Source: Diadema antillarum
Taxonomy: Eukaryota
Direction: 5' to 3'
Length of the DNA stretch: 64,000 nt
NCBI RefSeq assembly: GCF_040938485.1
Contig: NW_027271635.1
Coordinates: 1,798,001-1,862,000, forward strand
The notes beneath the pieces are model-generated. The model did not search any database and was not told where the DNA came from. It worked only from the letters and a program-made list of their open reading frames with translations. Both the position numbers and the translations under genes were made by a program. Below, one piece after another: positions 2,856 through 60,096 of this stretch. Numbering within the stretch: the stretch's first letter is position 1; the number at the start of each line of letters is the position of its first letter.

Positions 2856-2934
2856 ATGGCTTCTTCAAATCTTATGACAAATTTTGAGACTGTCATGGTC
2901 AGTTTTCTCCTCATCACGTTATCATCATTTTCAG
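2856..2934 (+). CDS. Gene S exon: signal peptide MASSNLMTNFETVMVSFLLITLSSFS
   Basis: ATG in ccaccATGg context, 26 codons + 1 nt (phase 1) ending at the N-gap. Upstream acceptor ttttcag at 2800 implies a 5'UTR intron. Confidence 0.7.
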
Positions 2935-5900
2935 NNNNNNNNNNNNNNNNNNNNNNNNNNNNNNNNNNNNNNNNNNNNNNNNNNNNNNNNNNNNNNNNNN
3001 NNNNNNNNNNNNNNNNNNNNNNNNNNNNNNNNNNNNNNNNNNNNNNNNNNNNNNNNNNNNNNNNNNNAATATAGGTGAAAGTATTCTTTTTAATGAAGAC
3101 CTCAATCTTATCAGGTAACTTTCGCTCGAGATAAAGTTTAGCCTTTACCGGGCACGTTCCCATCTTTTATTTGAGGGTGATCACTAATAAGAATTAGATT
3201 TAATAATCGCTTTAATGCCACATCAAACAAATTCTGTTTCTCACTTATTTCAATCCTCTTTGAAAATCTGACTTTACCTCTCACATATCTACCGATATAT
3301 TCATTCATACAATGCAAATCTTGCGTGAAAATGTATACACAAGAGTCATATAATGAAGCATAATATTATGCAGCTATTTATTTTAATGTTCCTTGCAAGT
3401 AACTGGATGCACGCTTCCTGAGGACCTTGACAGTGATTTGATCGTTAGTGACGTAAAGGAGGAGTACGAGTCAGGCAGCACCATCTACATTTCATGTCCG
3501 CCAGCTCCTTACATCAGCTCAGTTGGTACGACCGTTGCATTCTGTACGGACTTTGGATGGGTGCCATCGATCGATATCGACTGTTATGGTAAGACAACAA
3601 TGACAGATTGGAATTACTGGAAGTGATATTACCAGACATCTGCAGAGCTAATAACATGTTGTCATAAATCTATTCTCCTCATATTTATTCCTACAGCTCC
3701 CCCCCCCCCACACATACACACACACTTGTACGATTTTTTTAAAATGAAATTTGTTGATACAGTTTTGAATTGATTCTGATGCTCACGTTTTACCCGGCTT
3801 CTGGACCAGCTTCTCCGAGAGTGTTTAAAAAAATGTATTTAAGAATAATTATAACAACGTCAGCTGCGCCACAAGAAGAAATCAAATTCTTAAATGTTGC
3901 AAGACATTGAAATCTGGACAAGAGGTAGCTAGCATGTGAACGTTTATAATATTTGGAATCATCATTATTTTAGGGATTTTTGGACTGTGCACATAATAAG
4001 GGTACTCGAGGAAACATAGTCTAGACCAAAAAGGTACTTTATTCAGTAGACATCAGTTCTTAACTTTCCCTAACGCAAGGTAAATCTGGGTCTCATTGCT
4101 GCTTTTAAGGTGTTGTTTGTAGATAAATTACGATAATACCATTCACAGTCAATATCACAATCACTCTTTAAAAGAAAAAAAAATGTTTAGCTAAGGTTTA
4201 AACGCCCCCCCCCCCTTGACTTCATCTCTATCAGCTCCTTGCAACCGATCAGAGGTGGCGGGTTTATCATCGTACTCCTTGCAGTCTAGAGAGGATTCCA
4301 GTACTATCGCTACCGATCCCCAATTTGCACAAGGAGACGTTCTCAGCTACACCTGTGTAAGTAGCTATGAGTCAGCTTCAGAAACCATGGAATGTGACGA
4401 CGGTACATGGATTTCGTCACCCCCGTGTTTAGGTGAGAAATAATGGTTACTTTTGAGTTTGACCGCAAATATAATACATAGAACTATTTATAAACACACA
4501 AATGAAAAAAAGGGTACGTATTATGCATACTTCGTCCCAGACACATCGAATTGACGTACGAAACGAAACATGACAACATGACTCGAATTTACTAAAATTA
4601 TGGATACACCTCAAAGGAAAGTACACTGATAGCTTCATGTGTGTCAAATAGAGCCTACTTAAGCCTGCAGGCTAGTTTACAGGGTGACAGGGTAACCACC
4701 CCCTCCCCCCCCCCCCCCCGAAAAAAAAGGAAACAGAGAAAATAAGCAGACGCTTCCTGCGAAACTCGGCAAAATTGACCTCTAATATTTCGTCATGTAC
4801 GTCATGTCCCAAAATGTGACTTCATGAGGAGTGGAAACCAATGGACGTGGATGGATATTAACACGTCATCAGCGATCTGTACGAAAGCTCGTGATGAGAG
4901 TATTCATCGATAGTGGAGCACAGAATAGTTTGCAGGAAAGACGTCTGTTATTCCTACACTGCATTCGTGCAAAAAAAAAAAAAAAAAAAATGTGCAGAAA
5001 ATTTCTCATGCAGTAAATGCCATGAATCTCTATCTATTATGTTATATTTGCAGAAAAGATTACAAAATCTGAAAATCTAATTGAAAGGAAAACTTTGCTG
5101 TTATCCAATGATTCTGTCTATATTTTGTTTTTAGTGATACTCTGGACACTGTCTTCCGAACTATATCATATAAATTTACTTCTCCAGTTCTCTTAAATTA
5201 CGTGAGTCTTGATCTAATATCGATCACAAGCAATAAGTCTATTTACATATCCTATAATAAATTATTACATATTGTGTGTCACTCACATCCAGGTAGTCAT
5301 ATACATGTAATATACAATTAATCTACGAGTATTCATTGTATTTATCATATCTACGTGTACATAATTTCTTTTATGTTTATGTGCACTTACATAATTTATA
5401 TGCGATAACAATTATATTCAGCGTTATTCTCTCGCCCCCCCCCCCCTTCCCCGATTATGTGATTGCAGCACCATGCCCCATTTCTGAACTGGGCCCACGC
5501 CTCTCGCACAGCGTGGTTACGGGTGAGTTGATCGATGATCAGTATAGACATGGGTCGGTTGTTTCATTTACCTGCTCCAGTGGAACTCTTGTTGGAGACT
5601 CATCTGCAGAATGTGTAGACGGTTCTTGGAGTCCCAGTCAACCCACTTGTTCAGGTGAGAACTGAATCGAGTTTTGCTTCACTTCAATACAGTTCAGAAC
5701 CTAGATTAGAGAGAGAGAGGGGGGGGGGGGACGTCTTCTTGAAGAACTATGTGAATGTGTGGATGGCTCATGGGCCCAAACAACCCAGTTGCCTACAATG
5801 AGGACTGTTTTGAATATCGCCTAATCTGCGCGATGCGATTCGGAAGTGAAATGAAGCAAAGAAGGAAAATAAAAAAAGAAAGGAAATGAGAAAGAGAAAC

Positions 5901-8900: not shown

Positions 8901-11900
8901 GTTGGTGATGATCTACAGGTAGTCAAATGTGGCTTGATCTGTATCATAGTGTATAGCCGTATTCACATATTTTCCTAATTTACCTAGGGGATAGGTAATA
9001 ATTATGATATTGACTGGCCTTAAGGAAGATACCAGAGAATATTGCCCGCACTGAAGAAATATTACCCTCGTCTTCAACACAAGCAATATTCTTTCAGTTT
9101 GGGCATTATTTTCTGGTCCCTCCTTCAAGGCCAGTCAATATTATATAAGTATCCTACAGAATATGCGGGTTCCCGTCCATTCAATTGAATATCTGCCCTC
9201 TTTTTTATTACTAGTGGACTGCGCGGATCCAGCGGCGAATCAGGAGTCCTTGATGAAGACTGGGGAAGCCTACCAGCACGGAGAAACTGCAACTTATAGT
9301 TGCGCGGATAATTACAACACATTACATGGTTCTGCAACTACGACATGTAACAACGGTGAATGGTTTCCACTTCCAAGCGAGACCTCATGCCGTGGTAAGT
9401 AACTATTTTCACCTTTCTACAAATGTGTAGGCACAATGGTTGAGATTTTAACTGCATACGCCACGTGTACAAGCATGACAAGTGACTGTGGTTCTGAACC
9501 CTGTTGTTTCCTTACGACCGCGTGCAAGAAGTATTACCTGTCACTCATTGCTACTTCAGGGAGTTTCTTTTCGGAGTTTACTTCTTTCTAAAGACAATGT
9601 GTTTCAAATGTCCTAAACTAAAATAGAAAAGTATTTGGATTCTGTTACAAGTCTTCCAAAGGTCACTATAAAGAGCAAAAGGGGCAATATTGCAATACCC
9701 TATTAAGCCCTTGCTTGATGAATTATAAGATAATAATGGAAACCCATTTTCTTTGCTCTTTTTTTTTTCACTAAGAATTATAAAATAATTAAATATTACG
9801 TGGAAATCTACCCGAATGTTCCGATGTAACATCACTGAATCTAAAGACGAAAACGTTCTTTAACGATATGCCTCCAGTGTTAAATTTTTCATTGTCGGAT
9901 AGACGAAAATTCGGAATGACGATCATCGACCATATACGATAATAATCAGGTTCTTTGAAACTTAATAGAAAAATCCAACGCTTCTTGACTTTCATGTATT
10001 TCGTTGGGGGTTTTTTTATACATAACTATAACAATCTACGCTGCGTTCGGACTTTTGTTTACAGTATGCAGGTGGCAGCAAGCAGAAATATTTAGTTTGC
10101 AGGTCTGTTCTTGTACTGTTTTAGGCATGAGCCACAGATTTATGTCTCTGTATACAGTGTGTACCAGGTAGTGTATTCATCACATGATTAATTAAATAAC
10201 GTCACAGACATTCATTATTATCATTCCAGCACGTGGGAGGCCTTGGTATTGACAATATTGCTCTTGGATAATGGGACATTGGTCGTGCAATTATAGGCCA
10301 TTACAGTGCATATGTGCGAGTTCATGCATTTTACTACCCATGAAAATAATTGTCATGAATGTTTCTGTTTATTGTAACACAAGATTTTCTAAGTGGAAAA
10401 TTAAGCAAGGAAATGGGATTCCGGATGAAGGCCCTATGCTTTACCGACTGAGCTATAGAAAGCCCTTGTTCAGTGATCATCCCAGAAACCATAAATTCTC
10501 AATGCTTGAATGGTCAGAAGATAAATGGCAGTGTGATTGTGTGTGTTTCTGGGACGAACACTAAATTAGGGCATTCTATAGCTCAGTCGGTAGAGCACCG
10601 GGCTAGCATCCTGAGGTCTCGGGTTCGAATCCCTAAGGAATCTCATTTTCTTTGCTCAAATTTCCACTAACAAGATTTACTTGTTACAATATAAGGAACT
10701 ATTCAGTCATGAGTGGCAAATAATAGACATATTGACATCATGTACTTATTCTTTAATATGATATAATAGCGTGTTTAAACGAATACTATTAAAGGCTGAC
10801 CATATTATCTTTATCAAATTTATGTCTCACAGCGCCATGTGAAGCGCCCTCTGCAGCCAACCCAAGAGGCTTGTACGAACATGGAGTAAGCCAAACATTC
10901 TCCTGCGATACGTCACCTACTATCAGGAGTACCTTGACCTGTAACGATGGCAAGTGGGAAGGGACAGAGCTAGTATGTTCAGGTACGACTTATCTTGCAG
11001 CACGTCCTTCTACAATCAGTCATCTCCGCCTATCTATAAAATCATCCCACCGAACTTAACAGTCTCATTCACATCCAGAGATATGTTGTTTCCTATAGGT
11101 CCTAGTGTTGTCATGCACCATGTTAACTCGCAGGTTTCCAAATTGTTCTTCTTCAAGATATTATTTGTCTCAAAACTTCATAAATAGCAACATTTCATCT
11201 AACACATGATTTCCCAAAATCTATTAAATATGATATTCATGGTGACAGCTTTCAAGGAATATCATCCTTCTTGCCTATTTCCCTCCTATTTCTCTTTTAC
11301 ACCCAGTTCAACGAATCGATACCTTAATAAGTTAAACTCTCAGTTCATTTGACCATGAAAATAATCTAAGTGATAGGAAAAAGGACGTTCTTTTCAAGAG
11401 CATTCGTTTGTTACAATTAAATTGTTGCGACGAGAGTTCAAAGTTCCCTATATCATCGTTTCATTCCTGTGCATTTGCAGTGTTGTCGATTTACTTGCAA
11501 ATCTTTCCATGAGAAATATATATAACAGGACATGGAATCATGTCCTCCACATAATAACAGACAGTTTAAAAGAACACATAAATCATTGAATCAATTAATT
11601 GAAAATGATATGTATATGTATGTATGATAGATAGATAGATAGATAGATACATATATATCTTTCTAGGGCAAGGAATGGAATATCTAGGAGCGTGTGTAAG
11701 ATGAATGTACCTGGAGGTATTGCTCTTTTTTAATCACTCTCAAGTTATCTTTATTCCATGTCAAATTCAAAAAAGGATGTTTCAGGCCCACAATTCTGGA
11801 TGCTAACATCCAGCTGATCCCAGACTTGACGACTTATCCCAAAGGATTACTTATCAAGGAGGCAAATAAGGGTGGTGCCACAGTGAGCGCGGATGCAGTT

Positions 11901-12921
11901 TTCACAATGCGTCTATCCGGTTCCTTCACATTTTCACTCTCTGACGTCGACTGCAGCAGTGAGTTTTGAAAGATATTGTTGATTATAACGCGGGGACAAG
12001 CATAATTATTTCGACTTTTTTATTTTCTTTTATTTCTATTCTCGTCAAGCAATGTTTTGGTAATGTGACATATTGCCCCAAAATTTAACGTGTGGGTAAT
12101 ATATCATTATCATTATATAAATCTGAAGATGAATTTAACTGTTCAACAAGCATATTGTTCAGGGCTGTCTTTAAAGTCCTGAACACTTTGGATTTCCATC
12201 CCGTAGTTTGTAACTTTATGGTGGGTGTCTTTTTTTTTGTCAGTAAAATGTCAGTTTACTCATCCTCAAGCTCAAAAGCTAAAGTAGCACGTGGCGGCTG
12301 TAATCTTGCAGCTGTAAGTTATTAGGGTGTCGATGGGACTCTAGATAAGGAGGATCATCAATCACTTTTTTCTGAAGTTCCAAATAAAGATATAAATATC
12401 AAGATGAGCAATTTGTATTTCATGATATTGTATATTACATATTATATATCATATATTTTATATCAATTATTATATATTATATATTATAAATCATACATTA
12501 CATATTAAATATTATATATTAGATATTTCAAAATATGCACTATATATATTATATATTATATATTATATTTTATATATTATATATTATATATCACATATCA
12601 TATAATATATAATATATATCATGACATGCTAGTTGTACACTTCAGAGTCTTCATCACGCGCAGTGTCTATTCTTTTTCGCAAATCTAATCATGTCTCTAT
12701 ACATCACTGCCCTTCTTTTCATTCCTTTCGATCCATCTCTGACCATAGCTCCGTGTAATTCCCCACCTGCGGCTCAACCGGAAGGTATCTACGAGAGCGG
12801 AGCGAGCCAAACTTTCACCTGTGATAACTCGCAGGACCAGGCCACTCTAGAGTGCAAAGACGGAAACTGGTCCGATCCGTCCTTCACATGTCCGGATGAT
12901 GATGATATCATCACAAAATAA
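2856..12921 (+). CDS. Gene S: predicted secreted sushi/CCP-repeat protein (~506 aa; signal peptide + 8 CCP exons), join(2856-2934,3400-3588,4235-4432,5469-5654,7276-7458,9215-9394,10833-10982,11776-11958,12749-12921)
   Basis: Kozak-like GCCACCATGG, hydrophobic N-terminus, eight phase 1-1 exons with AG/GT boundaries each encoding a C..C..C..(W)..C sushi pattern. The joined 1521 nt read open to TAA. No TM segment found. First donor lies in an N-gap, so it is inferred. Confidence 0.85.
2935..3067. other. Assembly gap (N)
   Basis: Run of N; covers the first donor of gene S. Confidence 1.
3400..3588 (+). CDS. Gene S exon: sushi/CCP 1
   Basis: caag|...|gtaag, 189 nt, GCTLP...ISCPP...FCTDFGW...DCY. 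Confidence 0.9.
4235..4432 (+). CDS. Gene S exon: sushi/CCP 2
   Basis: tcag|...|gtgag, 198 nt, PCNRS...YTCVSSY...ECDDGTWISSPPCL. Confidence 0.9.
5469..5654 (+). CDS. Gene S exon: sushi/CCP 3
   Basis: gcag|...|gtgag, 186 nt, PCPI...YRHGSVVSFTCSSG...ECVDGSWSPSQPTCS. Confidence 0.92.
5753..5800 (+). pseudogene. Degenerate duplicate of the 3' end of sushi 3 exon
   Basis: gaatgtgtggatggctcatgg-gcccaaacaacccagttg aligns to gaatgtgtagacggttcttggagtcccagtcaacccacttg about 150 nt upstream, with indels and no donor. Confidence 0.6.
6745..6797. repeat. (AAATG)n preceded by AATAAA, probable retroposon tail
   Basis: Direct reading; similar tails at ~20750-20810, ~21775-21830, ~13957-13985. Confidence 0.85.
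7276..7458 (+). CDS. Gene S exon: sushi type A
   Basis: 183 nt (alternative in-frame acceptor at 7270), CQRPNSLDGNIQLTPDLTTYPAGSFIQVACMDGSTMTAGATFTLCQSNSFSFALTDVVCS, donor gtaag. Homologous to 41840-42022 and 38016-38198. Confidence 0.88.
7842..9066. repeat. Intronic tandem duplication, 2 units of ~610 bp
   Basis: Near-identical blocks starting attacc(t/a)atatga(g/a)gtagttttgcggggcaatt at ~7842 and ~8455. Confidence 0.9.
9215..9394 (+). CDS. Gene S exon: sushi type B
   Basis: ctag|...|gtaagt, 180 nt, DCADPAANQ...YSCADNY...TCNNGEWFPLPSETSCR. Confidence 0.92.
10414..10643. mobile_element. Two back-to-back tRNA-like (SINE head / tRNA pseudogene) sequences
   Basis: 10572-10643 (+) has A-box TAGCTCAGTCGGTAGAGC, B-box GGTTCGAATCC and AGC at the anticodon position, but broken stems. 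A truncated inverted copy lies at 10414-10465. Confidence 0.55.
10833..10982 (+). CDS. Gene S exon: short sushi type C
   Basis: acag|...|gtac, 150 nt, PCEAPSAANPRGLYEHG...FSCDTSP...TCNDGKWEGTELVCS. Confidence 0.9.
11776..11958 (+). CDS. Gene S exon: degenerate sushi type A (2nd and 3rd Cys lost)
   Basis: 183 nt open frame, strong donor gtgagt but purine-rich acceptor. CFRPTILDANIQLIPDLTTYPKG...EANKGG...TMRLSG...SDVDCS. Could be a skipped or pseudo-exon. Confidence 0.55.
12420..12620. repeat. Extremely AT-rich low-complexity (TATAT) tract
   Basis: Direct reading; lies in the last intron of gene S. Confidence 0.9.
12749..12921 (+). CDS. Gene S terminal exon: short sushi type C' + stop
   Basis: catag| PCNSPPAAQPEG...FTCDNSQ...ECKDGNWSDPSFTCPDDDDIITK* (TAA). 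Confidence 0.88.
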
Positions 12922-16496: not shown

Positions 16497-16582
16497 TCAC
16501 GTCTGTTGAGAATGAAAAGGGCGTTAAGTTGTCTTGAACACTTGTGACAACTTAACGCCCTTATCATTCTCAACAGACGTGA
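16497..16582. repeat. Isolated 86-nt hairpin (37-bp arms, 1 mismatch, 12-nt loop)
   Basis: tcacgtctgttgagaatgaaaagggcgttaagttgtc / gacaacttaacgcccttatcattctcaacagacgtga. Confidence 0.9.
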
Positions 16583-17945: not shown

Positions 17946-17990
17946 TCAACGTCCAGCCAGGTCATTGTAGATCACAGCCGGTCCTTTACC
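17946..17990 (-). CDS. M1 terminal exon GKGPAVIYNDLAGR*
   Basis: Strong pyrimidine tract + cag acceptor, phase 0, TGA; AATAAA on minus near 17750. Confidence 0.65.
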   Translation of the reverse strand, partial: GKGPAVIYNDLAGR

Positions 17991-18041
17991 CTGTTTGAAG
18001 AAGAAGAGAAAGTATAACTCTCTATTACATAAAACCGACAT

Positions 18042-18088
<47 letters not shown>

Positions 18089-18585
18089 ATATAAACATTT
18101 GGAGACAGAAAGATAGAGAGAGATGCATAAAGACGCTCTTGTAATACACACTTTTTATTGCATTATTTTTCTGACCCCCCCCCCAAAAAAAAAAAAGGGG
18201 GGGGGTGTACTGTGTGTTATTGTAGATTTTGCTAAACCACTTATACTCTCCCTCCAGTCAAGTATTTTGTCAGGGAAAATCATGTCGTGCCAACCTCCCT
18301 ATTTCAATATTATATTACATGTGTCCTCTACATATCGTGATATGATGCTAATGCGTATGCAATTCATTTTCAAAATGGGAGCTCAAAAAGACACTTTCAT
18401 ATTAATGTTGTACGTGCCAACACGATGCTCCAAATAACATTGAAATGGATTGATGTGGTCTATTTGTATTGGTATCTTATTGGAAGTTAGATGATTAATA
18501 TTTTTCCGTAGTCCGGGTCAATGAAGCAAACGGCTGTCCGGATGGGATCATGCAAATCCACAATGAAACAAACATTGAACCTGAT

Positions 18586-18621
<36 letters not shown>

Positions 18622-21600
18622 TTCAGCATATCACTGCGTTTAATGACGGACGGAACTTCAAAATCCGATGATCGCAGCGATTCAATATTTCTAATGTAAT
18701 GTTTGCATGTTTGGCCCCAGCAAGATGTGTGTTGTTCTGTTTCGTCTTCCTCCTCCACCTCTTCCTTTTCTTCCTCTTCTTCTCCATCTTCCTCTGTGTG
18801 TGTATGCATGTGGTGGGGGTGATTACAATGATGATGACGACGACGACAATGACGATGACGATGCTAGTGATGATTATATGTATGCATGTGTTTTGTAATT
18901 TTGTTTCAGTAAATTTAGCTATTCTCACCGATAGGGCGGCAGAGTATCGAGCGCCGGGAGTCATCAGGTGCTCTGCGGCGAACGGCGAATCGTTACGAGG
19001 CAGTTCCAAGGGGGGCTGCACACCCGGCCTCGTGTTGGGTCCATCCACTCTCCTCGAATACGGCACCAGCGAGTTTTCCTTTCCTGCATGCGTCGTCCTC
19101 CCCGGAGCGTCGGCCATCCTCAGGATGGACGTGCGGTATCTCTCCATAGGGGGATCGAGCACGGAATCGTGTTCAGAATCGTAGCGTTCCGACCCATCGA
19201 TGCTCTTGGCGAAGAACGGTCCCATCTGATCGTACCCCCGCGTCCGAGGATTGTAAGCAAAATTCTAAAACCAGAATTGGAATGAACAAAGATAGGCCTA
19301 TTAGGGAATTCACTTTGACCCCCTTGATTACATGGAATTAACAGAAGAAAGTCAAGTGAAAGAAAAGTCAAAACGCTTTACACATGTGTTTATCTGCGTA
19401 ACAATATGGTGCTGATCTTCATGTACAGAAATTCAAATCGGAATTATTACATGTATTAAATATCTTTAACGTAGGCCTACACTTGCGCACTGCGACTTCA
19501 ATACCATATCAAATTGCACTCGTGGTACGGCTTGATATTCTATACTTTGTATCTTATTCAACAATCACAGAATTGTGCAGAAACAAAATGAAAACAAAAT
19601 ACGCCGAACAGGTAATATGCCGCGGGGTGGGCCGTACCTCGTTTCCATGCATATAAATATCGTCGTCATTGTCGAGCTCCGAGTTGAGATACCCCCTCAT
19701 TCTCCTCCGGTCGAAGTCGTCGTTGAAGTGTTTTGCGTTCCGGTGACGCCTAGCAACAGTTGCCAGGTAACACAGACAGAAGGAGAACACGATAAGAAGT
19801 ACCATGATGCTCACGCCTATGGTTAGCACTGCAATCGCCCACGCCGCTGGAAAAGTAGACGGAAAAATCACGCGATTAACGTAAGGGGAAGAACGTAAAG
19901 ATGCAGAGGATAAACTGGGACAGTATGGTAACGCGAAAAAACAACAACACCTAATCTTGTTTATTGTGGAAGTAATAGTCTTTGGGGTGATATCATGTCC
20001 ACTAGACCTATTTCCGCCATCAGCCCCAAAACAACATATCGTTTTTGTCATGTATATGACTATCATGGCTGACACATTATACTAAACAGGCTAAACTTTA
20101 GCTGCAATAAGGGGTATCGAATAAAGCAAAAAAGACTTCAGGACAATTACTCCTAGGACATTAAGCCCCAGTCCTGGGACCTGTTGCACAAAAGTTGAAA
20201 TCAAACATAAGTCAGAGACTCAATCTAAGTCTCTGAATACTCAGTTCTGATTGGCTGATTCCTGACATACGATCAATTTTCTGACTTATGTTGGATTGTA
20301 TCTCTTTTATGCACCAGGGTCTTGGAGGGGTAATTGTCCGGATGCGATTATCTACTTTAATAGTCGTGAACAGAGCAGCAAAGATCGATTCGATCAAATG
20401 TCGATATTGCGCTATTCATAATCCATACAGCATGTTTTTGAACAAAACATGCATTTATAATGCTGAAAGGCCCTTTACGCGAATGGTATGCAAGGCATTG
20501 TGTTAGCCCCTGTTCGTGTTTGATTTGGGGAATGAGAAGAGGATAGATTGCTGTTTCCCCCCCCCCCCCCCCCAGAATCGTAGAATGTATAAGTATGTTA
20601 GTATTTATTATGCCCCTCTTATACTGATCATAGACACCAACATGCTGTTATTTGTTGGCTGCCCGTTTATCATTCGATAAAATACATGTCAAGTTTAGCA
20701 TATTTCTTTGTAGGCCTACATTCTGCTGAAAAAGTGAAATAATGCTTGAATTTAATTGAATTGGATTGGATTGAATTGAATTGAATTGAACTGAACTGTA
20801 TTGAACTGAAATAAGGCCAAGTGAAAAAAACCCAACATGGTTAAAATCATTAGTTTCTCGATGGATACGTCGCAAAGACAGAATGTAACCCCCATGTTAG
20901 GCTGTTTGTTGTTGTTGGGAATAGCTTTTCTATTAAATGTGTGACTTCCTCATACTTTACAACAGGGGGCGAAATGTGTATGGTTTGGAGAGTGGTGAGG
21001 GTGATTTCATAATGACATTTTCAAAGTAGTTGGGCTTACGTAATCCAGTCGGAGGGGAACTCGTTGTCGCGATGATTTCTATAGGAAATCAATGAGAAAG
21101 AAAGTAAGAGATAAAGAAAAGAGAGAGAATGTATAATATATGGTTTAAGATATTGCATGTTCCTTTCAAGCGAAGCATGAAATATGATTACGATCGGGAA
21201 ATGAGAAATGCCAAAAGCTTGTGAACATTTCTTGATAAAACGCATATACATTCTAATCTGTCTCGAACAAGCGTATGTCCTTTCTTATGATCGTTCGCAG
21301 TTATTTGAACATTGCCGTGTATTTCTCTTCTTTTTTTCAAATCTGGACTTGATTTAAAGAAGGTGATTAAATAAGCCTTTGCTCAAAATAAGCTATACTT
21401 TCTCCAATTTGTGAATTGGTAGAAGAATTCACGTTATTCTTCTGTATTTTCTTTTTTTTCTATGTTTCGGTCATTCGATGTACCTGTGCTCCTTATCTTA
21501 ATCTTTACGCTCGATTTTAAGTGAGACCTTCGCTCGACAAGCTTGCTTCTAAGTAGGTTCCATAATATTTCATTCTCAGATTCCAACTTTCATAGATCGA

Positions 21601-27600: not shown

Positions 27601-30469
27601 ATTAGATTAGTAAGCCCGTCCTCCGTTACTCCAGTCACACCTGTAGTGCTAACGGACTGCACAGAGGTGAACGTCCCAGCTGATCCTGTTTGCGTCTCCA
27701 CCACTTCTGTCAGACCTTCACCTGTTACAACCGTTCTCTCGGGGCCGCTGACGATTGAGGTAGCGGTGTCTGTATTCAGGTCCGTACGGAGTGACATTGT
27801 CTCTGTTACTTCCAAAGTTGCTTCCGTTGTAGTCGGTTTCCGCGAGGACGTTTCTCCGTTGAAGTCGGTACTTGCGAACGCTGCGGAGGATGTTAGCGTT
27901 TCGGTCAGGGTGAAGGTTGCGTCGGTTGTTACCATGGTTGCTGCTGTATCGGTACGACTCGAGATTGTGGAGGGCGATCCTGGTCCTGTCTCGGTGATGA
28001 CAAATGTGGCAGTCTGTGTGTAGTTAGCAGAAGTGGGATTCGTAGTGGCTGCAAATGCTGTGTAACGGAAAAGTTCGATATTGCACATGGTTTAGATCAA
28101 AGAATATTATTTCATTTGTCTGTCATTCAACATTGCTGACGTGTCCAAGTTTCCAAACTATACCTTCGAAGTCTTTGCATTTTCAACGTAACACGGTAAG
28201 TGAAACGCTGTTGTAAGTTTGACGAAATTATCGGTTGCATTTTAACAGAAATAGTAGGCCCTCCGTCTTTACAAGGCAGTTATATGAGTAAGTATCATCT
28301 ACCGGTATGCAAATTAGTTGAGTGATGGTGTCGTCAGTTAACACTTCTCCAGATTGGTCGGCCTGCACACCCGAAATCCATATCTAAACTTGAAGTAAAC
28401 GAAGAATTAAATCATTTTCATAAAACTATACTGATTTAGCAAATGAGTGTTTCTGTTAAGGACACACTCGTCACTTCTAAAGATGTGCCCCAAGCATTTT
28501 CATATTGACCGCGTGTACATACCGTACATTCATATTTGCTGGAAATAAATGTCACTGAACTTAGAACTTGAATGGAACATGGCATAGAGAAAAAAAAACT
28601 GTTTCACGCAAGTGAGTGTTCGTTCAATTTTGCAAACAATTGACGTCTTGAATGCAAGAGGGGTGAAGATATGGGTGTGATTTTATTTTTTTCAATTTGT
28701 ACAAAGGGAGACAAATTGAAGAAAATCATGCCCCAGTTGAATCTTTGTTGTAAGTTTCACTTTGTAGACACTACCACTGTGCCAGTAATATCCAATAGTT
28801 GATCACATTAAAGTGATTAGTACAAACTCACATTCTCCACACACGCGACCTGGGAGGGTGTCTGGAAAGTAATCCGTAAAACCGTCGTGGCAGGTGCAGG
28901 TGAAACCGCCCGCAACGTCCGTGTCCGTACAGTTCGCATCAGGCGAGCAGTCATTCAGTGCGTTTGCGCATTCATCGACAGCTGTAGCGTTACAAAATAT
29001 AAGAGACAGCGAGAGAGAGAACTAAAATTTGCCGCAAGTATACTTACTTACGTGCATATTCTCCAAACAGGTCAGTAGAATATTTTCTCACTTTGCATGA
29101 TACCTTAACATCATATTCGTAACTATATATTATTTCTTATTCTGGATCCTGTTGATCAGAAGAACAAGAGCATTCTCATTTTCATAGTTCGCATCGCAAA
29201 ATATACATTACAAAATCAACAATCCATAATCCAATCCAACAGAAATGAAAGACGTCTGATCCAATTTCGGTCATACAATACAGCATGTGTTAACATCGAT
29301 ACAATTCGAAACCACGAAAAAAAAACCATCTGCTGAAAATACAAAAACAGAAAAGGACCTATTATTCCTCGCATATTTCTCACGTTTGAAAACAACGGAA
29401 AGATACTGATACCTTGAACTATTACGTCATTGATATCGTCAGAGCGTATTCTGAGCGAAATCGGCGTCGCGCTTGATGTGTCGTTGGCGAAACCCGCGTT
29501 CTGCATCAACTGTTCGAAGATGAGAGTCTGGAGTGCCGTGGCGTTACCAGCAAAAGAGCCAGAGAAATCCAGTTCCACATTAACCACAACGCTTCCATCA
29601 CTGAAGCTGATGACGTTTACAGATTGAAAGTCATTTTCTCCGAGCCGCCCGGAGAAGAGCGCGGCGAGCTGAAAAGAATATAGATAATGTTTCAGAGTAA
29701 TATTGTAAGCTTGAAACACGAATATCATGAGATTGCTCTGAAAGTTTTGCCCCTGTCTATTGCAACGGTAAATTCTATTAAGTTGCATGTTATAATACAT
29801 ACGTAAAGAAAAAATATATAGAAAATGTAAAGAAAAATATTATGCTATTTACATTGGTGATGACCTACAGGAAATATCATACATTGAAATATGGGTAGAT
29901 GACGATTTTGACTCCCCCCCCCCCCCCTTCATTAAATCAACACAAAACAAAAACGTAAGTGAGACAATAATCATATTTTCTTTTTCACCGAATGATTTGT
30001 TCATAGTCTCGAGAAGACAGTAAAAATATGAAAGCAATATCTCCCTGCTGTACATACCTTAGTAAACACTCCATCGTTACGTAAAGAACATAATTCAAGA
30101 GATTAAACTTTTTTTTTGCTTTATAACCTTACAATGTCACAAATATCAGCATTGTTCTTCAATTCCGTATATGTCTACGATATCGCAGAAGAGATAAGTA
30201 GATAGACACGTGCAAGTGTTATTGGCTTCGATGGTAGTTCTTCTGTTTTTCTTTATGCATTGCCATCGTCATAGCGTCGGGTGTGTAGGTTTTACAACAT
30301 AATAACTATAATATATAATATATAATCGTTGGCGTTCCATGCCAAAGACCCGGGTTCGATTCCCGGCGGAGACCAACTTTTCAACTCTTGCACTTTTTCG
30401 AAAAGGGTGAACAGTGAGAGGAATAATGATGCCAAAGCTACGGCACCGTTTTTTACTTCCTCTCTGATA

Positions 30470-30541
<72 letters not shown>

Positions 30542-33500
30542 GGAAAGAAATACATCATAATTTCATTGTACTCACAGCATTTCTTACTGCTGTGGCAAGC
30601 TCCTGATACTGGGTTGAATTCGGATCATTATAAGCATCTGCGAAATCTGCATTTTCACCGTCAATCTCCACAATAACTACGGACACTGCGAAAGTAACTG
30701 CAGCTGTAGAAGAATCAGAGGTACTGTGTATTAGTTTTGGTATGTATGACCGGGACACTGCTGTTTCTAACATGCCTGATAGAAATGTACTGCAATGCGG
30801 ACCATTAAATCATTGAAATAAACCCTTACGCAGTTTTGGTGAAGAGATTTTATCTCCAGATATATCTAACATATATCATTTTCGAGTGTCAAATGGGTTT
30901 CTTCTTTAACATCTTCTGTCATGACATTTATCAATGCTTTAACCTGTTGAGGTCGAGTCCCAAGTATACTCGGGCAGGGGTCTATGGGAAATGCGTGTTG
31001 TAGCAAAATCAGTCCGTCCTCAACGGGCTAAAGACAATCGACTGGTTTAAGTTCATTTGCATGAGGGTAGTGATCATCTTCACTTGTATAACGTGGATGG
31101 AATCGTTAGCATGGTTAGTGTTGGTTAGTGAGAGAATAAAGCGCGATACAAAAGGCCAAAATTAAAAGTGCCGGAAAGCCATGTCATCAGATATCTTCTA
31201 TTTGTTCACCTTTATTACACATAATTAGCAAGTGAATTACTCCTCTGCTTCCAACATATCTCATCTTTTTTTTTTAATGAAACCGGCATTCACGATTCAG
31301 GAGCAGAAAAAGAAATGGAAACAATGATATCATTTTCATAAGAGGTTTCTTATTATCTCACCGAAAAAAAAAATGTTAGAAACCTGGAGTTATGTAGCAA
31401 CCAAAACTATACGATCCCTTTAAATCTATTACATTGCCATCCACGTGACCGACTCACTTATGCATTGACCAGTTACGGTGTCCCGAGTACTTCCGGGTCG
31501 ACAGGAACAGCTGTGACCTCCTTCGGCATTCTCTTCGCAGAGCTCTGTCTCGAAGTTGCATGCGTTGCCACATTCGTCTGTAGAGATGTTAAATGTTCCC
31601 GAACTTAATTACACACGTTTAACACCACCAAAGAATCAAGTGGAAGAAAGAAAATTTTGCTTCCTCTTTTTCCATCATATTCATGCTACCTTATACTGTA
31701 TAAGTTAAACGATAACAAGCAAAGGAAGTTATTGACTACATAAGTTATAAAGAATATCAATTTTACCGTCATCTATGTGTTAGAACTATATCTCCCTGTT
31801 TCGATATTGCCTGACCAATATATTTACCGTTCGCAGAGAGGAAAAAGTAAGTTACCAGTTGTCAGCTCTCGTTCTGGATTTCAATACCCAATGAAGGGAA
31901 TTCAATATGATAATTCGTAGACTTAAAGATTGTTGGTAATTTAGTGATGACACAAAAAAGTGAAATGTATTGATGATGAGATGGATACGAATAAGGTGAA
32001 ATGCAGCTTTAAAGAAAAAAATGAATGCACATTTCAAATGAAGAGGTCTGCAAAGAAACGAAGCTGCGAAAGAAGAAGGAAATGGTGGACAGTTTTCAAT
32101 CGTGTATGTCGATTCTACGTATGCCTTATGTGATTGATGGGGGTAGGGGAGCAAGCTGATGTTAGCCAGTAAAGGGTCTGGACTCTCACTCAGGAGATTC
32201 AAGACTCATATCCTGCCAAGGAGTGTACATCGTCTGACAAGCTGTTCTATACAAAATGTTTAGACCGCCAAGCTTTGTATGTATAATATGCCTATCTAAC
32301 TCGGATAGCTGATTATGAGGGAAACTGATCATGAGAGGAGCCCTCCCATTCAAAGAGCAGAGTACACACTACACAGTCGTACCTTAAGTTAAAATCGGGA
32401 CTATTGATTATTGTGGTTGCTAATTCATCGTTATTTTTTTCGTATTTCTGTCATCATAATCATCAATATCATTAGTATTTATTTTTTTATCATTATCACA
32501 TTATAATGTTATCATTATCATCTCTGTAATCATCATGTTAATATTCATTGTCATCAATACCGTTTTTATTCTAATTTTCAGTACACTGTATCATTAGCAT
32601 GATTCTTTGTATTGACAATGTCATTATCAATATAACTCTATCATTATCATTGCCATTGTTTTTGTAACTGCCTTGTGGCATTTCCTTGCTTCAGCAACAT
32701 GATGAGTGAACATGATGAGTGAGCATGATTTGCTGTTTGTAATAACAGACTGATCAATCGAGAATAACCTAACAGTCTGACAGACTGAACACATTATTAC
32801 CATTTACCAGTGCAACAGGCGGTGATGGTATGGCACTGATGATATTCAATTTATATTTGTCAGAAAATTCATTCATTCAATGTTGATGTGTTTTCAAGCT
32901 GATGGAATGAACATAATATATCATTACCTCTGCAAACGTCATCCACGAGCTCTTTGCCCGGTTGGCATACGCACACAGGCCCATTTGACGATTCTGCACA
33001 ATACTGCCCATCGGTGCAGCTACCTGTTCCGCATGGTTCTGACGCAAAAAACAACAACAACAACAACAAAAATATGTGAAGAGAGAGGGACACCATTTAA
33101 GGATGTACACACAATATTGCAAACCACTAAAAGAATGAAAATGATTCACCAAATGTGTGTGAGAGATTATGTTTTCATCTATAGGTTAACAGTCAAGGAT
33201 CATATATGGCACGGATTGATATCAAAATAAATTTATTTGTAAAGAAATTCTTTTTAATCAGTATTGCTGCGATGTGATATCTTGATTTGCCAGCATTTGA
33301 GAACATTTTGTCGATGTGGATACATCAACCCTTGTCATTTCATTCGTGGATGCATTTGGTAATTTTGTAATTCTTGGAAATATATTGGTATAATCTACAT
33401 AATAATGATTGCAATTTGATTCGACTCTATCAAATATTATTACCTTCCAGCACAGTTGGCTCCGGGGCTTCTGTAGTTCTCTTGTCTGTAATTTCGTCAA

Positions 33501-37600: not shown

Positions 37601-37634
<34 letters not shown>

Positions 37635-39659: not shown

Positions 39660-39705
<46 letters not shown>

Positions 39706-42700: not shown

Positions 42701-43754
42701 TTGTCCGATAAGAGTCCGATGGGGCAAGCAAGGTGCAAAACTGTTGTTCATTTTTTGGATATCATATACTGAGTTATTATTAGAAATGTAAATTCTGGCG
42801 AGAGGATCTAGAGGTTTTCAATCTTATAAACATTTCCGCTCATTTGAACCTGTTATACCATGTCTGAAATTTATATGATAATCATTATAATTTCAAAGGC
42901 ACTGATTTGACTGTAAGGAGTGGAGTAAGTTTGATACAGATCCTGCAATACTGTTTTAATTAACAGTAAATGGATGCAACTGCGTACGCCAATCTGATTG
43001 TCAATGGTACTGTAAAATTCACGCCGTTTGTTGTCCTTTGGGTCAAAGTTGTTCGTATGCCTTCTCCTTGTCTTGCAAACAATCAAAATGGAATTATTCT
43101 ATGGAGAAAGTAGTCAAGTAAAACACTACAAACAAAAACAAGAACAAAACTTGCAATACAACATGAAGTCAAGATTTATTTTGCCAGGTAGTAGATAAAA
43201 GAACATTAAGGCTTGATACAGCCCCTGAAGACAAAAAAAAAAATCATACCTGAAAAGAAAAGCAGAAGTGGTTATACGTCGCTAATAATTGGTAGTACCG
43301 AGAAAAATATAGTAGCAGCATCTCTAAATCTAGATGCAATGGCTTGCACGGAGAATGTTTAATTTCTGCAATACTGAGAGCAGAAAATATAGGTAAAAAC
43401 TACATTTAAATCGGAATCAAGTGTCTGCATTTTGCATAATTATAGCGTACCAGATTTTATTCAGGGCAGATGAAATTTAAGTAAATTAGAATCGAGACAC
43501 TTAATTTTATTTCACGATATAAGCCCACTATATGTCGTCTACTATGACGCCCATCAAAACGAGTACCAGCTTGCTTTTACGTAATCAAGAAGTATCAAGT
43601 GAAAATGGAATCAGTTAATAGTGTTGTGCACAAAAAAGAAATGAATGAAATATAAATTCAAAACAAGATCAAATAGTAAGCACTTACGAGCAGTGCACAG
43701 TTCAATCAAGGCCCAGATTACAATTAGGACTGAAGACATCCGGTTGATCGTCAT
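17946..43754 (-). CDS. Gene M1: predicted type I membrane sushi-mucin-EGF-SEA protein (~2218 aa, 23 coding exons)
   Basis: Exons (minus): 43688-43754, 41840-42022, 40393-40572, 39276-39425, 38016-38198, 36839-37018, 35604-35750, 33444-34943, 32928-33038, 31458-31577, 30576-30703, 29413-29668, 28832-28981, 26150-28057, 25118-25228, 24700-24816, 23573-23700, 22630-22885, 22024-22176, 21040-21078, 19638-19846, 18929-19264, 17946-17990. All have AG/GT boundaries and compatible phases; total 6657 nt, open to TGA. Confidence 0.88.
18929..19264 (-). CDS. M1 exon: cytoplasmic tail
   Basis: ttttag|NFAYNPR...GPFFAKSIDGSE...AALS|gtgaga, 336 nt, phase 0-0; homologous to 59332-59712. Confidence 0.8.
19638..19846 (-). 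CDS. M1 exon: transmembrane helix + membrane-proximal tail
   Basis: 209 nt, phase 1-0, AWAIAVLTIGVSIMVLLIVFSFCLCYL followed by basic RRHR. Confidence 0.9.
21040..21078 (-). CDS. M1 micro-exon: juxtamembrane linker IIATTSSPPTGL
   Basis: 39 nt, polypyrimidine + tag acceptor, gtaagc donor, phase 1-1; resembles M2 linker IATTTSSGPGGTL. Confidence 0.75.
22024..22176 (-). CDS. M1 exon: calcium-binding-type EGF 6
   Basis: 153 nt, VNECLTATLNDCAAEADCTDSDEAGGFTCTCREGYTDAFETTLPGRVCRE. Confidence 0.9.
22630..22885 (-). CDS. M1 exon: SEA domain 2, C-terminal half
   Basis: 256 nt, contains FSEGSVVAD. Confidence 0.9.
23021..23421. mobile_element. MITE family 2 copy (opposite orientation)
   Basis: Shares ggggcttcaggtttt, aatggctgagatatc, gaattcctcttagaattg, aaagctgaatcctc with 25384-25774. 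Confidence 0.65.
23573..23700 (-). CDS. M1 exon: SEA domain 2, N-terminal half
   Basis: 128 nt, ...SYTDPSSQEYQDLVTAITNA|gtaagt. Confidence 0.88.
24700..24816 (-). CDS. M1 exon: EGF-like 5 (paralogue of EGF 2)
   Basis: 117 nt, ECGNACDFETQLCEENADGMFVCQCRPGRSLNNEGVCV. Confidence 0.9.
25118..25228 (-). CDS. M1 exon: EGF-like 4 (paralogue of EGF 1)
   Basis: 111 nt, PCGTVSCNDGEYCAESAEGPVCVCLPGKTPVGDTCQ. Confidence 0.9.
25384..25774. mobile_element. ~390-bp MITE family 2 (AAAGGGATGGTATAGTATTGGTTGAG-type ends)
   Basis: Imperfect TIRs and an internal palindromic core (aatggctgagatat / atatcacagccatt); homologues at ~23021-23421, ~48770-49150, partial ~31270-31424. Confidence 0.7.
26150..28057 (-). 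CDS. M1 exon: S/T-rich mucin-like stalk 2 (636 codons) with 73-aa tandem repeats
   Basis: 1908-nt phase 1-1 exon inside ORF 26139-28088. Confidence 0.92.
26400..27400 (-). repeat. Coding tandem repeat, 219-nt (73-aa) period
   Basis: Anchor tctgaa(a/g) recurs at 26442, 26661, 26880, 27099, 27318. Confidence 0.92.
28832..28981 (-). CDS. M1 exon: calcium-binding-type EGF 3
   Basis: 150 nt, VDECANALNDCSPDANCTDTDVAGGFTCTCHDGFTDYFPDTLPGRVCGE. Confidence 0.9.
29413..29668 (-). CDS. M1 exon: SEA domain 1, C-terminal half
   Basis: 256 nt, phase 0-1, contains FSDGSVVVN. Confidence 0.9.
30329..30540 (+). mobile_element. tRNA-Gly(TCC)-like 3' half followed by a unique body and (CA)n(TA)n tail; SINE-like
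   Basis: Perfect anticodon stem TTGGC/GCCAA around GTTCCAT and perfect T-arm CCGGG-TTCGATT-CCCGG; 5' half replaced by AT-rich sequence. Confidence 0.55.
30576..30703 (-). CDS. M1 exon: SEA domain 1, N-terminal half
   Basis: 128 nt, phase 1-0, ...FADAYNDPNSTQYQELATAVRNA (typical SEA L.dp.S..y..L motif). Confidence 0.88.
30943..31027. mobile_element. 85-bp piggyBac-like MITE, copy 1
   Basis: TTAA-CC(T)GTTGAGG...CCTCAACGGG-CTAA; reverse-complement homologue of 46399-46483. Confidence 0.75.
31458..31577 (-). CDS. M1 exon: EGF-like 2
   Basis: 120 nt, ECGNACNFETELCEENAEGGHSCSCRPGSTRDTVTGQCI. Confidence 0.9.
32928..33038 (-). CDS. M1 exon: EGF-like 1
   Basis: 111 nt, PCGTGSCTDGQYCAESSNGPVCVCQPGKELVDDVCR (6 Cys). 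Confidence 0.9.
33444..34943 (-). CDS. M1 exon: acidic Thr-rich mucin-like stalk 1 (500 codons)
   Basis: 1500-nt phase 1-1 exon inside ORF 33430-34953; T/S/E/D-rich, no Cys. Confidence 0.9.
35604..35750 (-). CDS. M1 exon: sushi C2
   Basis: aaag|...|gtaaga, 147 nt, PCYSPPASQPEG...FTCENS...ECNDGSWSDPSFTCP. Confidence 0.9.
36157..36404. mobile_element. ~250-bp MITE family 1 (TGAAGAGTTTGTTTGCAAAAACCGATAAGTCCAT TIR)
   Basis: ~34-bp imperfect TIRs; homologues at 57234-57482 and 47642-48251. Confidence 0.8.
36839..37018 (-). CDS. M1 exon: sushi B2
   Basis: ccag|...|gtatgt, 180 nt, DCEDPAANQ...YTCAENY...TCNNGEW...SCR. Confidence 0.92.
38016..38198 (-). CDS. M1 exon: sushi A2
   Basis: taag|...|gtaagt, 183 nt, CALPTSLD...VACMDG...LCQSD...VVCS. 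Confidence 0.9.
39276..39425 (-). CDS. M1 exon: sushi C1
   Basis: atag|...|gtac, 150 nt, PCEAPSAASPRG...FSCDTSP...TCNDGNW...LTCS. Confidence 0.9.
40393..40572 (-). CDS. M1 exon: sushi B1
   Basis: ttag|...|gtaagt, 180 nt, DCEDP...YSCAENY...TCNNGTW...SCR. Confidence 0.92.
41840..42022 (-). CDS. M1 exon: sushi A1
   Basis: taag|...|gtaagt, 183 nt, CQKPDNLD...VACMDG...FCTSG...VVCS. Confidence 0.9.
43688..43754 (-). CDS. M1 exon: signal peptide MTINRMSSVLIVIWALIELCTA
   Basis: aaaATG, 22 codons + 1 nt, donor gtaagt, hydrophobic core with a CTA cleavage-like end. Confidence 0.8.
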
Positions 43755-47261: not shown

Positions 47262-47392
47262 NNNNNNNNNNNNNNNNNNNNNNNNNNNNNNNNNNNNNNN
47301 NNNNNNNNNNNNNNNNNNNNNNNNNNNNNNNNNNNNNNNNNNNNNNNNNNNNNNNNNNNNNNNNNNNNNNNNNNNNNNNNNNNNNNNNNNNN
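47262..47392. other. Assembly gap (N)
   Basis: Run of N; abuts the left arm of the nested palindrome. Confidence 1.

Positions 47393-60035: not shown

Positions 60036-60096
<61 letters not shown>

What the first reader, a model, noticed from the sequence alone, without database searches (positions are those of the whole stretch)
2856..43754. Convergent secreted / membrane-tethered gene pair sharing one sushi cassette (candidate receptor-decoy system)
Seen: gene S (+) and gene M1 (-) face each other and carry the same distinctive A (183 nt), B (180 nt) and C (150/147 nt) sushi exons. By hand count, S-B differs from M1-B2 at 10 of 59 residues, and S-A differs from each M1 A exon at 11 of 60. 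Flanking introns show no similarity I can see. S has a signal peptide and no TM. M1 displays the cassette at the tip of ~1100 aa of mucin stalk and has a signalling-type tail. Established: CCP modules bind complement and carbohydrate ligands, and soluble/membrane pairs occur in the vertebrate RCA cluster (factor H/C4BP vs CR1/CD46/CD55). Inference: S is a soluble competitor or scavenger for the M1 ligand, or the reverse, in an invertebrate immune, barrier or gamete-surface system. I do not recognise this pair as a named family.
Basis: partly seen in the sequence, partly recalled or inferred. Interest (0 to 1): 0.82.

Follow-up and report, generated by a model that had tools for sequence, protein, structure and literature searches.

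The report
Secreted copy of a mucin's sushi head
In the sea urchin Diadema antillarum, a giant membrane-anchored mucin with six sushi modules at its tip lies tail-to-tail with an unannotated gene that appears to encode a membrane-free copy of those modules; selection has kept that copy intact, but a decoy role is untested.

Summary
The window is Diadema antillarum. Gene S (+, 2856-12921) and gene M1 (-, 43754-17946) share colinear sushi (CCP) exons. S has L-V-E-L'-N; M1 has L-V-E-L-V-N. These exons are 80-83% identical in DNA, and the introns do not align.

M1 is more than sushi plus stalk. All 22 exons join in frame into a 2,205-aa protein: signal peptide, 6 CCP, mucin, EGF-EGF-SEA-EGF, mucin, EGF-EGF-SEA-EGF, transmembrane segment and a 165-aa tail. 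This is a MUC3/12/17-style membrane mucin with a CCP head. NCBI splits it into three "uncharacterized" models and omits the transmembrane exon. Relatives exist in D. setosum (87% identical head) and in Lytechinus ("mucin-3A-like", 41%).

S is not called as a gene, and no RNA run was available. Even so, its exons show purifying selection (branch dN/dS 0.16, CI 0.09-0.28). Its 480 visible codons are open, and the duplication predates the D. antillarum/D. setosum split. It has no transmembrane exon. Its signal-peptide exon runs into the assembly gap, so the N-terminus is unverified.

The soluble competitor or decoy reading is plausible but remains inference. Moderate interest: a new variant of known kinds.

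The parts
2856..2934 (+). S exon 1: ATG in a strong Kozak context, 26 codons with a hydrophobic core; truncated by the assembly gap at 2935-3067
   Evidence: hydropathy. The exon end and frame across the gap are unknown.
3400..3588 (+). S CCP exon s1 (189 nt, phase 1-1), weakly L-like
   Evidence: Pfam Sushi below threshold; 30% identical to M1 L1.
4235..4432 (+). S CCP exon s2
   Evidence: Pfam Sushi 28.1 bits, above the 20.7 cut-off
5469..5654 (+). S CCP exon s3
   Evidence: Pfam Sushi 35 bits
7276..7458 (+).
   Evidence: CCP fold shown for the L1-V1 pair.
9215..9394 (+).
   Evidence: Pfam 32.9 bits; 10/59 aa differences from M1 V2
10833..10982 (+). S exon E (150 nt, short CCP)
   Evidence: 13/49 aa differences from M1 E
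11776..11958 (+). S exon L': degenerate L copy that has lost Cys2 and Cys3. The frame is open and the GTGAGT donor is good, but the acceptor is A-rich and weak, so it may be skipped.
   Evidence: branch dN/dS 0.28-0.33
12749..12921 (+). S terminal exon N: CCP, then a lost donor (GT to AT), read-through PDDDDIITK and a TAA stop
   Evidence: ATTAAA at 13160
43688..43754 (-). M1 signal-peptide exon
   Evidence: identical to the start of XP_071505067.1
35604..42022 (-). M1 CCP head, six exons: L1 42022-41840, V1 40572-40393, E 39425-39276, L2 38198-38016, V2 37018-36839, N 35750-35604
   Evidence: same as NCBI model P0001
33444..34943 (-). M1 mucin exon 1 (500 aa, S+T 36%, D+E 21%)
28832..33038 (-). 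M1 module 1: EGFa 33038-32928, EGFb 31577-31458, SEA 30703-30576 plus 29668-29413 (GSVVV motif), EGFc 28981-28832
   Evidence: Pfam SEA E=4e-22 and EGF_CA
26150..28057 (-). M1 mucin exon 2 (636 aa, S+T 41%), including a 219-bp repeat x4.1 at 26416-27321
22024..25228 (-). M1 module 2: EGFa 25228-25118, EGFb 24816-24700, SEA 23700-23573 plus 22885-22630 (GSVVA motif), EGFc 22176-22024
19638..19846 (-). M1 transmembrane exon with the start of the cytoplasmic tail; absent from all NCBI models
   Evidence: Homologous transmembrane exon in the same position in Lytechinus.
17946..19264 (-). M1 tail exons 19264-18929 and 17990-17946 (ends ...VIYNDLAGR-stop)
   Evidence: Equals the NCBI 113-aa model. 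Tail is 52% identical in Lytechinus.

Best explanation
**What it is.** M1 is an old echinoid type-I transmembrane mucin. Its order of parts is: signal peptide, six CCP modules arranged as two L-V-(E/N) triplets, mucin, EGF-EGF-SEA-EGF, mucin, EGF-EGF-SEA-EGF, transmembrane segment, and a tail with tyrosine motifs. In the Diadema lineage the CCP head was copied in inverted orientation. The copy gained its own start exon and three further CCP exons, lost the splice donor after its last CCP, and now ends in a stop. The result, gene S, encodes a protein of 7-8 CCP modules with no membrane anchor.

**What is shown.** The paralogy, the gene structures, the absence of transmembrane exons in S, and purifying selection on S.

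**What is inferred.** S is secreted and presents the same recognition modules as the M1 tip. It would then bind the same class of ligand in body fluid or mucus, acting as a soluble counterpart (competitor, scavenger or opsonin-like factor). M1 would sense or hold that ligand at the cell surface, and could shed its own head through SEA self-cleavage.
For: - **Paralogy.** The L, V, E and N exons are colinear at 75-83% aa identity, L' is a more diverged copy (53-57%), and the introns are unalignable.
- **M1 model.** 21 exons join with no stop and the 15-codon last exon completes the frame, with every phase fitting. Exons 1-10, and separately 11-19, match the NCBI models P0001 and P0016 exactly. 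The order CCP head, mucin, SEA, EGF, transmembrane exon, tail is repeated in Lytechinus and, as far as the fetched DNA reaches, in D. setosum.
- **Domains.** Pfam finds Sushi, SEA (E=4e-22) and EGF_CA. The AlphaFold model of L1-V1 has pLDDT 86.6, and all the top listed Foldseek hits are CCP-containing proteins, many aligned over tandem CCP pairs such as C4BP CCP1-2, factor H 19-20, CD55 and CD46.
- **S is under selection.** Pairwise dN/dS is 0.17-0.23, Fisher p=2e-13. The S branch gives 0.16 (bootstrap CI 0.09-0.28) over 216 codons, with D. setosum as third taxon. By my arithmetic from these branch lengths, about 0.7 would be expected if the S lineage were neutral.
- **S is old and intact.** By the same arithmetic the S/M1 split is about 2.4 times older than the species split. 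The chance of keeping 480 codons stop-free under neutral change is 0.003 at only 0.1 substitutions per site, and no simulated sequence stayed stop-free at 0.2 or 0.33.
- **No anchor in S.** No hydrophobic segment and no downstream exon.
Against: - S is not called as a protein-coding gene in the NCBI annotation of this assembly.
- No S-like protein of 187-595 aa or 522-1,660 aa from either Diadema species is in the 5.8-billion-protein collection.
- No RNA run could be listed, so transcription, splicing and co-expression are unverified.
- The signal-peptide exon is cut by the assembly gap.
- L' has lost two of its four cysteines.
- The extra CCPs s1-s3 have no counterpart in M1, so S may bind something else.
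- The NCBI model for the middle of M1 ends in a mini-exon (VQI-stop at 21346-21337). If real, this would give M1 a membrane-free isoform of its own.
- No ligand is known for either protein.
Confidence: 0.6

Rival explanations
1. S is a real, selected secreted CCP protein, but it has taken on a function of its own. For example, it may be a humoral recognition or regulatory protein with a different ligand. Its position next to M1 would then only reflect how it arose.
For: - S carries three extra CCPs (s1-s3) with no M1 counterpart.
- It has lost the second V module, and its L' is degenerate.
- 13/49 residues of E and 12/48 of N differ from M1.
- The duplication is old, with dS about 0.6-0.7.
Against: The shared L and V modules are the slowest-evolving copies at the protein level (S-branch dN 0.04-0.05, dN/dS about 0.10). 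That fits retention of the ancestral binding surface. There are no functional data either way.
Confidence: 0.25
2. S is an untranscribed or decaying partial duplicate (a young pseudogene) that merely still looks open.
For: - Not annotated.
- No RNA evidence obtainable.
- The terminal donor is lost.
- L' has lost two cysteines and has a weak acceptor.
- The first exon cannot be verified because of the gap.
Against: - Branch dN/dS is 0.16 with an upper bound of 0.28.
- All eight visible exons keep open frames and AG/GT sites in phase.
- The chance of this under neutrality is at most 0.003.
- The copy predates the split of two Diadema species.
Confidence: 0.12
3. The inverted copy is an assembly artefact, such as a misjoined haplotig.
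For: There are three N gaps in the window, one of them inside S exon 1.
Against: The copies differ by 17-20% in exon DNA and their introns do not align at all. S also has unique exons. Haplotypes would be near-identical throughout.
Confidence: 0.01

Closest known systems
Vertebrate regulators of complement activation: soluble factor H and C4BP versus membrane CD46, CD55 and CR1
   Same: - Proteins built of tandem CCP modules, one phase 1-1 exon per module.
- Soluble and membrane-bound paralogues sit side by side in one locus.
- CD46 and CD55 also place the CCP head on a Ser/Thr-rich stalk.
- The top listed fold matches are all CCP-containing proteins, most of them from this group or other complement components.
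   Different: - Only generic CCP similarity, about 17-30% identity; no orthology is shown.
- M1 has giant mucin domains, SEA and EGF modules and a long tail that these regulators lack.
- No link to C3 or C4 was tested.
SEA-type transmembrane mucins (MUC3, MUC12, MUC13, MUC17)
   Same: - Large Ser/Thr-rich exons with tandem repeats.
- A SEA domain with the G|SVVV motif, flanked by EGF modules next to a single transmembrane segment and a cytoplasmic tail.
- NCBI's automatic name for the Lytechinus relative is 'mucin-3A-like'.
   Different: - An N-terminal head of six CCP modules.
- The mucin plus EGF-EGF-SEA-EGF unit occurs twice.
- The stalk is acidic and poor in proline (2-5%).
- Orthology to the vertebrate genes was not tested.
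Decoy or soluble receptors that arose by gene duplication (for example DcR3, IL-1R2)
   Same: A paralogue keeps the extracellular recognition modules of a membrane receptor but has no transmembrane segment or tail.
   Different: This is an analogy from my own knowledge, not a test. Here no ligand, no expression and no competition have been shown, and S carries additional modules.
Sea urchin CCP mosaic proteins SpCRL and SpCRS, and the 63-kDa sperm membrane protein that gave the SEA domain its name
   Same: Echinoid proteins that combine CCP modules with Ser/Thr-rich regions, or EGF modules with a SEA domain. This is recalled from memory and was not tested here.
   Different: None of them appeared among the hits to the M1 head.

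Membership tests
CCP / Sushi module (Pfam PF00084) | Four cysteines in the C1..C4 pattern within about 60 residues | tested here: met
   Met by all modules of S and M1 except L', which lacks Cys2 and Cys3
CCP / Sushi module (Pfam PF00084) | Profile score above Pfam's curated cut-off | tested here: inconclusive
   V, s2 and s3 pass (28-35 bits against 20.7). E, N and s1 are below the cut-off. L and L' give no hit. Profile-profile comparison of L against the other modules is not significant.
CCP / Sushi module (Pfam PF00084) | CCP beta-sandwich fold | tested here: met
   The L1-V1 model has pLDDT 86.6. All the top listed Foldseek hits are CCP-containing proteins, many aligned across both modules as tandem CCP pairs. 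The protein-language-model neighbours of L are Sushi clusters.
Regulators of complement activation | Specific sequence relationship to factor H, C4BP, CD46, CD55 or CR1 | tested here: not met
   Only generic CCP-level similarity, shared equally with factor XIII B, beta-2-glycoprotein, C2, factor B and SVEP1
Regulators of complement activation | Binds C3b or C4b; decay-accelerating or cofactor activity | not testable with these tools
   Needs protein assays
SEA-type transmembrane mucin | Long Ser/Thr(/Pro)-rich domain encoded by large exons with repeats | tested here: met
   500 aa and 636 aa, S+T 36% and 41%, but proline only 2-5%. 219-bp repeat x4.1.
SEA-type transmembrane mucin | SEA domain with the G|SVVV cleavage motif | tested here: met
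   Pfam SEA E=4e-22, two copies. GSVVV in the first and GSVVA in the second. Cleavage itself was not tested.
SEA-type transmembrane mucin | EGF modules beside SEA, then one transmembrane segment and a cytoplasmic tail | tested here: met
   The same order is seen in Lytechinus.
SEA-type transmembrane mucin | Orthology to vertebrate MUC3/12/13/17 | not tested
   Only NCBI's automatic name 'mucin-3A-like' for P0020. The SEA region has no significant match to any solved chain by sequence.
Soluble decoy of a membrane receptor | Shares the receptor's extracellular recognition modules | tested here: met
   75-83% aa identity over L, V, E and N
Soluble decoy of a membrane receptor | Lacks a membrane anchor and signalling tail | tested here: met
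   (genomic sequence only)
Soluble decoy of a membrane receptor | Expressed and secreted, and competes for the same ligand | not testable with these tools
   No RNA run listed. The signal-peptide exon is cut by the gap.

The most novel reading that the evidence does not exclude
S is a Diadema-specific soluble decoy or scavenger that evolved from the head of a microbe- or glycan-sensing membrane mucin. The two outermost M1 modules, L1 and V1, change fast between Diadema species (dN/dS 0.39, against 0.12-0.16 for the inner modules), while the S copies of the same modules are held almost constant (about 0.10). That pattern would fit a surface receptor under pressure from a pathogen or symbiont, paired with a conserved soluble partner. 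This would matter in a species known for pathogen-driven mass die-offs.
Probability: 0.15. Interest if true: 0.7.

Novelty: new variant of a known kind. Interest (0 to 1): 0.45.

Why it matters
**Annotation.** It adds a probably functional gene (S) that the public annotation misses. It also shows that one 2,205-aa membrane mucin is split there into three "uncharacterized" models that leave out its transmembrane exon. The Lytechinus relative is fragmented in a similar way.

**Mucin evolution.** M1 shows a MUC3/12/17-style EGF-SEA-EGF-transmembrane design in echinoids, capped by a CCP head and conserved from Diadema to Lytechinus. This bears on where membrane mucins came from.

**Gene birth.** The S/M1 pair is a clean natural case of a membrane protein's recognition head becoming a stand-alone, probably secreted protein through partial inverted duplication and loss of one splice donor.

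**Testability.** If S and M1 share a ligand, they would form a simple invertebrate soluble/membrane recognition pair that can be tested directly.

Tried and rejected
- **RNA evidence.** The look-up of sequencing runs listed no run, so read laying could not be used.
- **Earlier scan notes.** Nothing near this place and nothing by words. Genome-wide notes gave the organism and a similar mucin elsewhere.
- **L-type profile against 1.84 billion representatives.** Only the M1 model itself was strong; the other hits were generic repeats.
- **Search for an annotated S.** The M1 head as query at 187-595 aa found only a Ciona SVEP1-like protein.
- **Profile-profile comparison of L against the other CCPs.** Not significant.
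- **Single-sequence AlphaFold of L1-V1-E.** Useless, pLDDT 49. A 5-row alignment was needed.
- **SEA/EGF region against solved structures by sequence.** Nothing significant.
- **Remnants on the S side.** I looked for a mucin, EGF, SEA or transmembrane remnant downstream of S, and for a lost V exon between L' and N. None was found.
- **S orthologue in D. setosum.** It could not be reached: the fetched locus ends before the M1 transmembrane exon, and the next look-up would have needed a typed spliced protein.
- **S-like exons in Lytechinus.** None in the 5 kb downstream of the Lytechinus gene. None would be expected, because S is far younger than that split.
- **Literature.** The searches found no paper on a CCP-headed echinoid mucin.
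- **Assembly artefact.** Rejected on divergence.
Full report
**1. Source and setting.**
The window is eukaryotic, about 37% G+C, with three N gaps at 2935-3067, 47262-47392 and 50809-50983. An exact protein match places it in Diadema antillarum, assembly GCA_040938485.1, contig JBFRCO010000747.1. Earlier notes of this scan had already named the genome as Diadema. They had also flagged, on another piece, a "sushi-tipped MUC3/12/17-type" mucin.

**2. The observation.**
A pattern scan and tblastn with the window's own exons locate the sushi (CCP) exons on both strands.

| Gene | Exons in order |
|---|---|
| S (+) | s1 3400-3588, s2 4235-4432, s3 5469-5654, L 7276-7458, V 9215-9394, E 10833-10982, L' 11776-11958, N 12749-12921 |
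| M1 head (-) | L1 42022-41840, V1 40572-40393, E 39425-39276, L2 38198-38016, V2 37018-36839, N 35750-35604 |

- Every internal boundary is AG...GT in phase 1-1.
- The shared part is colinear: L-V-E-L'-N in S and L-V-E-L-V-N in M1.
- DNA similarity is confined to the exons at 80-83%, apart from the degenerate L' exon at about 70%, and the introns do not align.
- The similarity is far beyond chance, and too diverged to be an assembly duplicate.

**3. The gap.**
The S start codon at 2856 sits in GCCACCATGG. It opens 26 codons with a hydrophobic core and then runs into the N gap. The end of that exon and the frame across the gap cannot be known from this sequence, and I did not fill it. The signal peptide is therefore plausible but not verified.

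**4. Gene S.**
- Joined without exon 1, the eight CCP exons give one open frame of 480 aa.
- The last exon has lost the donor that M1 uses (GT to AT). It reads nine more codons to a TAA stop.
- No transmembrane-grade segment is present.
- No copy of any M1 mucin, EGF, SEA, transmembrane or tail exon, and no convincing open frame, lies on the + strand before the M1 3' end.
- The two stop codons are about 5 kb apart, tail to tail.
- L' has lost Cys2 and Cys3 and has an A-rich acceptor. It may be skipped, which would keep the frame.
- s1-s3 have no M1 counterpart. s1 is faintly L-like.

**5. Gene M1.**
Open-frame and splice-site analysis of the minus strand shows more than a stalk. After the head comes:
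- a 500-aa mucin exon;
- EGF-EGF-SEA-EGF;
- a 636-aa mucin exon containing a 219-bp repeat;
- a second EGF-EGF-SEA-EGF;
- a transmembrane exon and two tail exons.

Twenty-one exons join with no stop and the 15-codon last exon completes the frame, giving a 22-exon, 2,205-aa protein in which every phase fits. Pfam confirms SEA (E=4e-22) and EGF_CA. The first SEA has GSVVV, the classic self-cleavage motif, and the second has GSVVA. The tail is 165 aa and carries YDQM and VIYNDL.

NCBI cuts this gene into three "uncharacterized" models:

| NCBI model | Content |
|---|---|
| 949 aa | Ends by reading into an intron |
| 1,095 aa | Starts at an internal Met with no signal peptide; ends in a four-codon mini-exon |
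| 113 aa | Tail only |

The transmembrane exon is in none of them. Where they overlap, their exons are identical to mine.

The merged model is supported by relatives:
- The Lytechinus variegatus relative has the CCP head, mucin, SEA, mucin, EGF-EGF and the first part of a second SEA in one NCBI model.
- That relative then has the rest of that SEA, an EGF-like exon, a homologous transmembrane exon and a tail 52% identical, in the same order.
- The D. setosum orthologue (head 87% identical) shows the same exon order as far as the fetched DNA reaches.

**6. Are the L exons sushi modules?**
Pfam does not recognise them, and a profile-profile test is weak. Other evidence supports a CCP fold:
- Sequence search of the Protein Data Bank aligns L1 plus V1 to CCP pairs of factor B, vaccinia complement control protein and factor H.
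- Language-model neighbours are Sushi clusters.
- An AlphaFold model of L1-V1 built on five natural sequences (pLDDT 86.6) matches only CCP-containing proteins among the top listed hits, many of them as tandem CCP pairs across both modules.

L is therefore a divergent CCP with Phe in place of the usual Trp.

**7. Is S alive?**

Against:
- It is not in the NCBI gene calls over window 11337-17946.
- No S-like protein from either Diadema species is found in the size ranges searched.
- No RNA run could be listed.

For:
- Pairwise dN/dS between S and M1 exons is 0.17-0.23, Fisher p=2e-13.
- With D. setosum as a third taxon, the branch leading to S has dS 0.52, dN 0.082 and dN/dS 0.16, bootstrap CI 0.09-0.28, over 216 codons.
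- By my arithmetic from those branch lengths, about 0.7 would be expected if the S lineage had been neutral.
- The same arithmetic puts the duplication at about 2.4 times the depth of the D. antillarum/D. setosum split.
- Over that time a neutral 480-codon frame would almost surely have acquired a stop. The chance of staying open is 0.003 even at 0.1 substitutions per site.

I conclude that S is, or very recently was, a functional coding gene. These are distance-based estimates on short exons; a codon-model test with more species is needed.

**8. History.**
The Lytechinus head is also two L-V-(E/N) triplets, so the six-module head is ancient. S is 75-83% identical to the Diadema M1 modules, but only 36-39% (L) and 40-57% (V) identical to the Lytechinus ones. 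S therefore arose within the diadematoid lineage, by an inverted partial duplication of the head. It then lost the second V, let L' decay, gained s1-s3 and a new first exon, and lost the last donor. The direction, head to S, is inferred from this.

**9. Function.**
Nothing here tests a ligand. By architecture, M1 is a membrane mucin that holds a CCP recognition head far from the cell. It could shed that head at its SEA sites and may signal through its tail. S is the same head without an anchor. The most economical reading is a soluble counterpart that binds the same class of ligand. Whether it competes, scavenges or opsonises cannot be said.

Between the two Diadema species the outermost M1 modules evolve faster than the inner ones: dN/dS is 0.39 for L1+V1, 0.12 for L2+V2 and 0.155 for E+N. 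The S copies of L and V are the most conserved (about 0.10). This is suggestive only, as the numbers are small.

**10. Comparison and novelty.**
- The pair works like the vertebrate soluble/membrane complement regulators, but it fails the test of specific relationship to them.
- M1 meets the architectural criteria of SEA-type membrane mucins. Orthology to them was not tested.
- The literature searches I ran found no paper that describes a CCP-headed echinoid mucin or its secreted paralogue.
- I class it as a new variant of known kinds, of moderate interest. The concrete gains are an unannotated gene under selection and a corrected model of a large mucin gene.

Noticed in passing
window 17946-43754 (-): The NCBI annotation of D. 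antillarum splits M1 into three 'uncharacterized' models of 949, 1,095 and 113 aa. The transmembrane exon (19846-19638) is in none of them. The middle model starts at an internal Met with no signal peptide.
   Followed up: yes
window 21337-21346 (-): A four-codon terminal mini-exon (VQI-stop) closes the NCBI 1,095-aa model. If it is really used, M1 would have a membrane-free isoform.
   Followed up: partly
window 58564-63452 (-): A second related gene (M2) lies upstream of M1 in the same orientation. Visible parts: a SEA fragment 63452-63192, an EGF 62527-62300 (58% identical to M1 EGFc), a transmembrane exon 61027-60770, and tail exons 59859-59314 and 58785-58564. Its 5' end is outside the window.
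   Followed up: partly
window 26416-27321: A 219-bp (73-aa) tandem repeat, 4.1 copies at 91% identity, lies inside M1 mucin exon 2.
   Followed up: no
window 7838-9062: A tandem duplication of about 612 bp (92% identical) lies in the S intron between L and V. Palindromic inverted repeats lie at 9003-9145 and 10420-10614.
   Followed up: no
window 40393-42022 versus L003 11714-13800: The two outermost M1 modules (L1, V1) differ by 15-16% in DNA between D. antillarum and D. setosum, against 5-8% for E, L2 and N and 13% for V2. Between-species dN/dS is 0.39 for L1+V1 against 0.12-0.16 for the other modules.
   Followed up: partly
L004 9544-9711 and 36779-41075: The Lytechinus variegatus 'mucin-3A-like' model also looks truncated. 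An L-type CCP exon lies upstream of its annotated start. The second SEA part, an EGF, the transmembrane exon and the tail lie beyond its end, and the tail is called as a separate 146-aa gene.
   Followed up: partly
window 47262-47392 and 50809-50983: Two further assembly gaps lie outside the finding.
   Followed up: no
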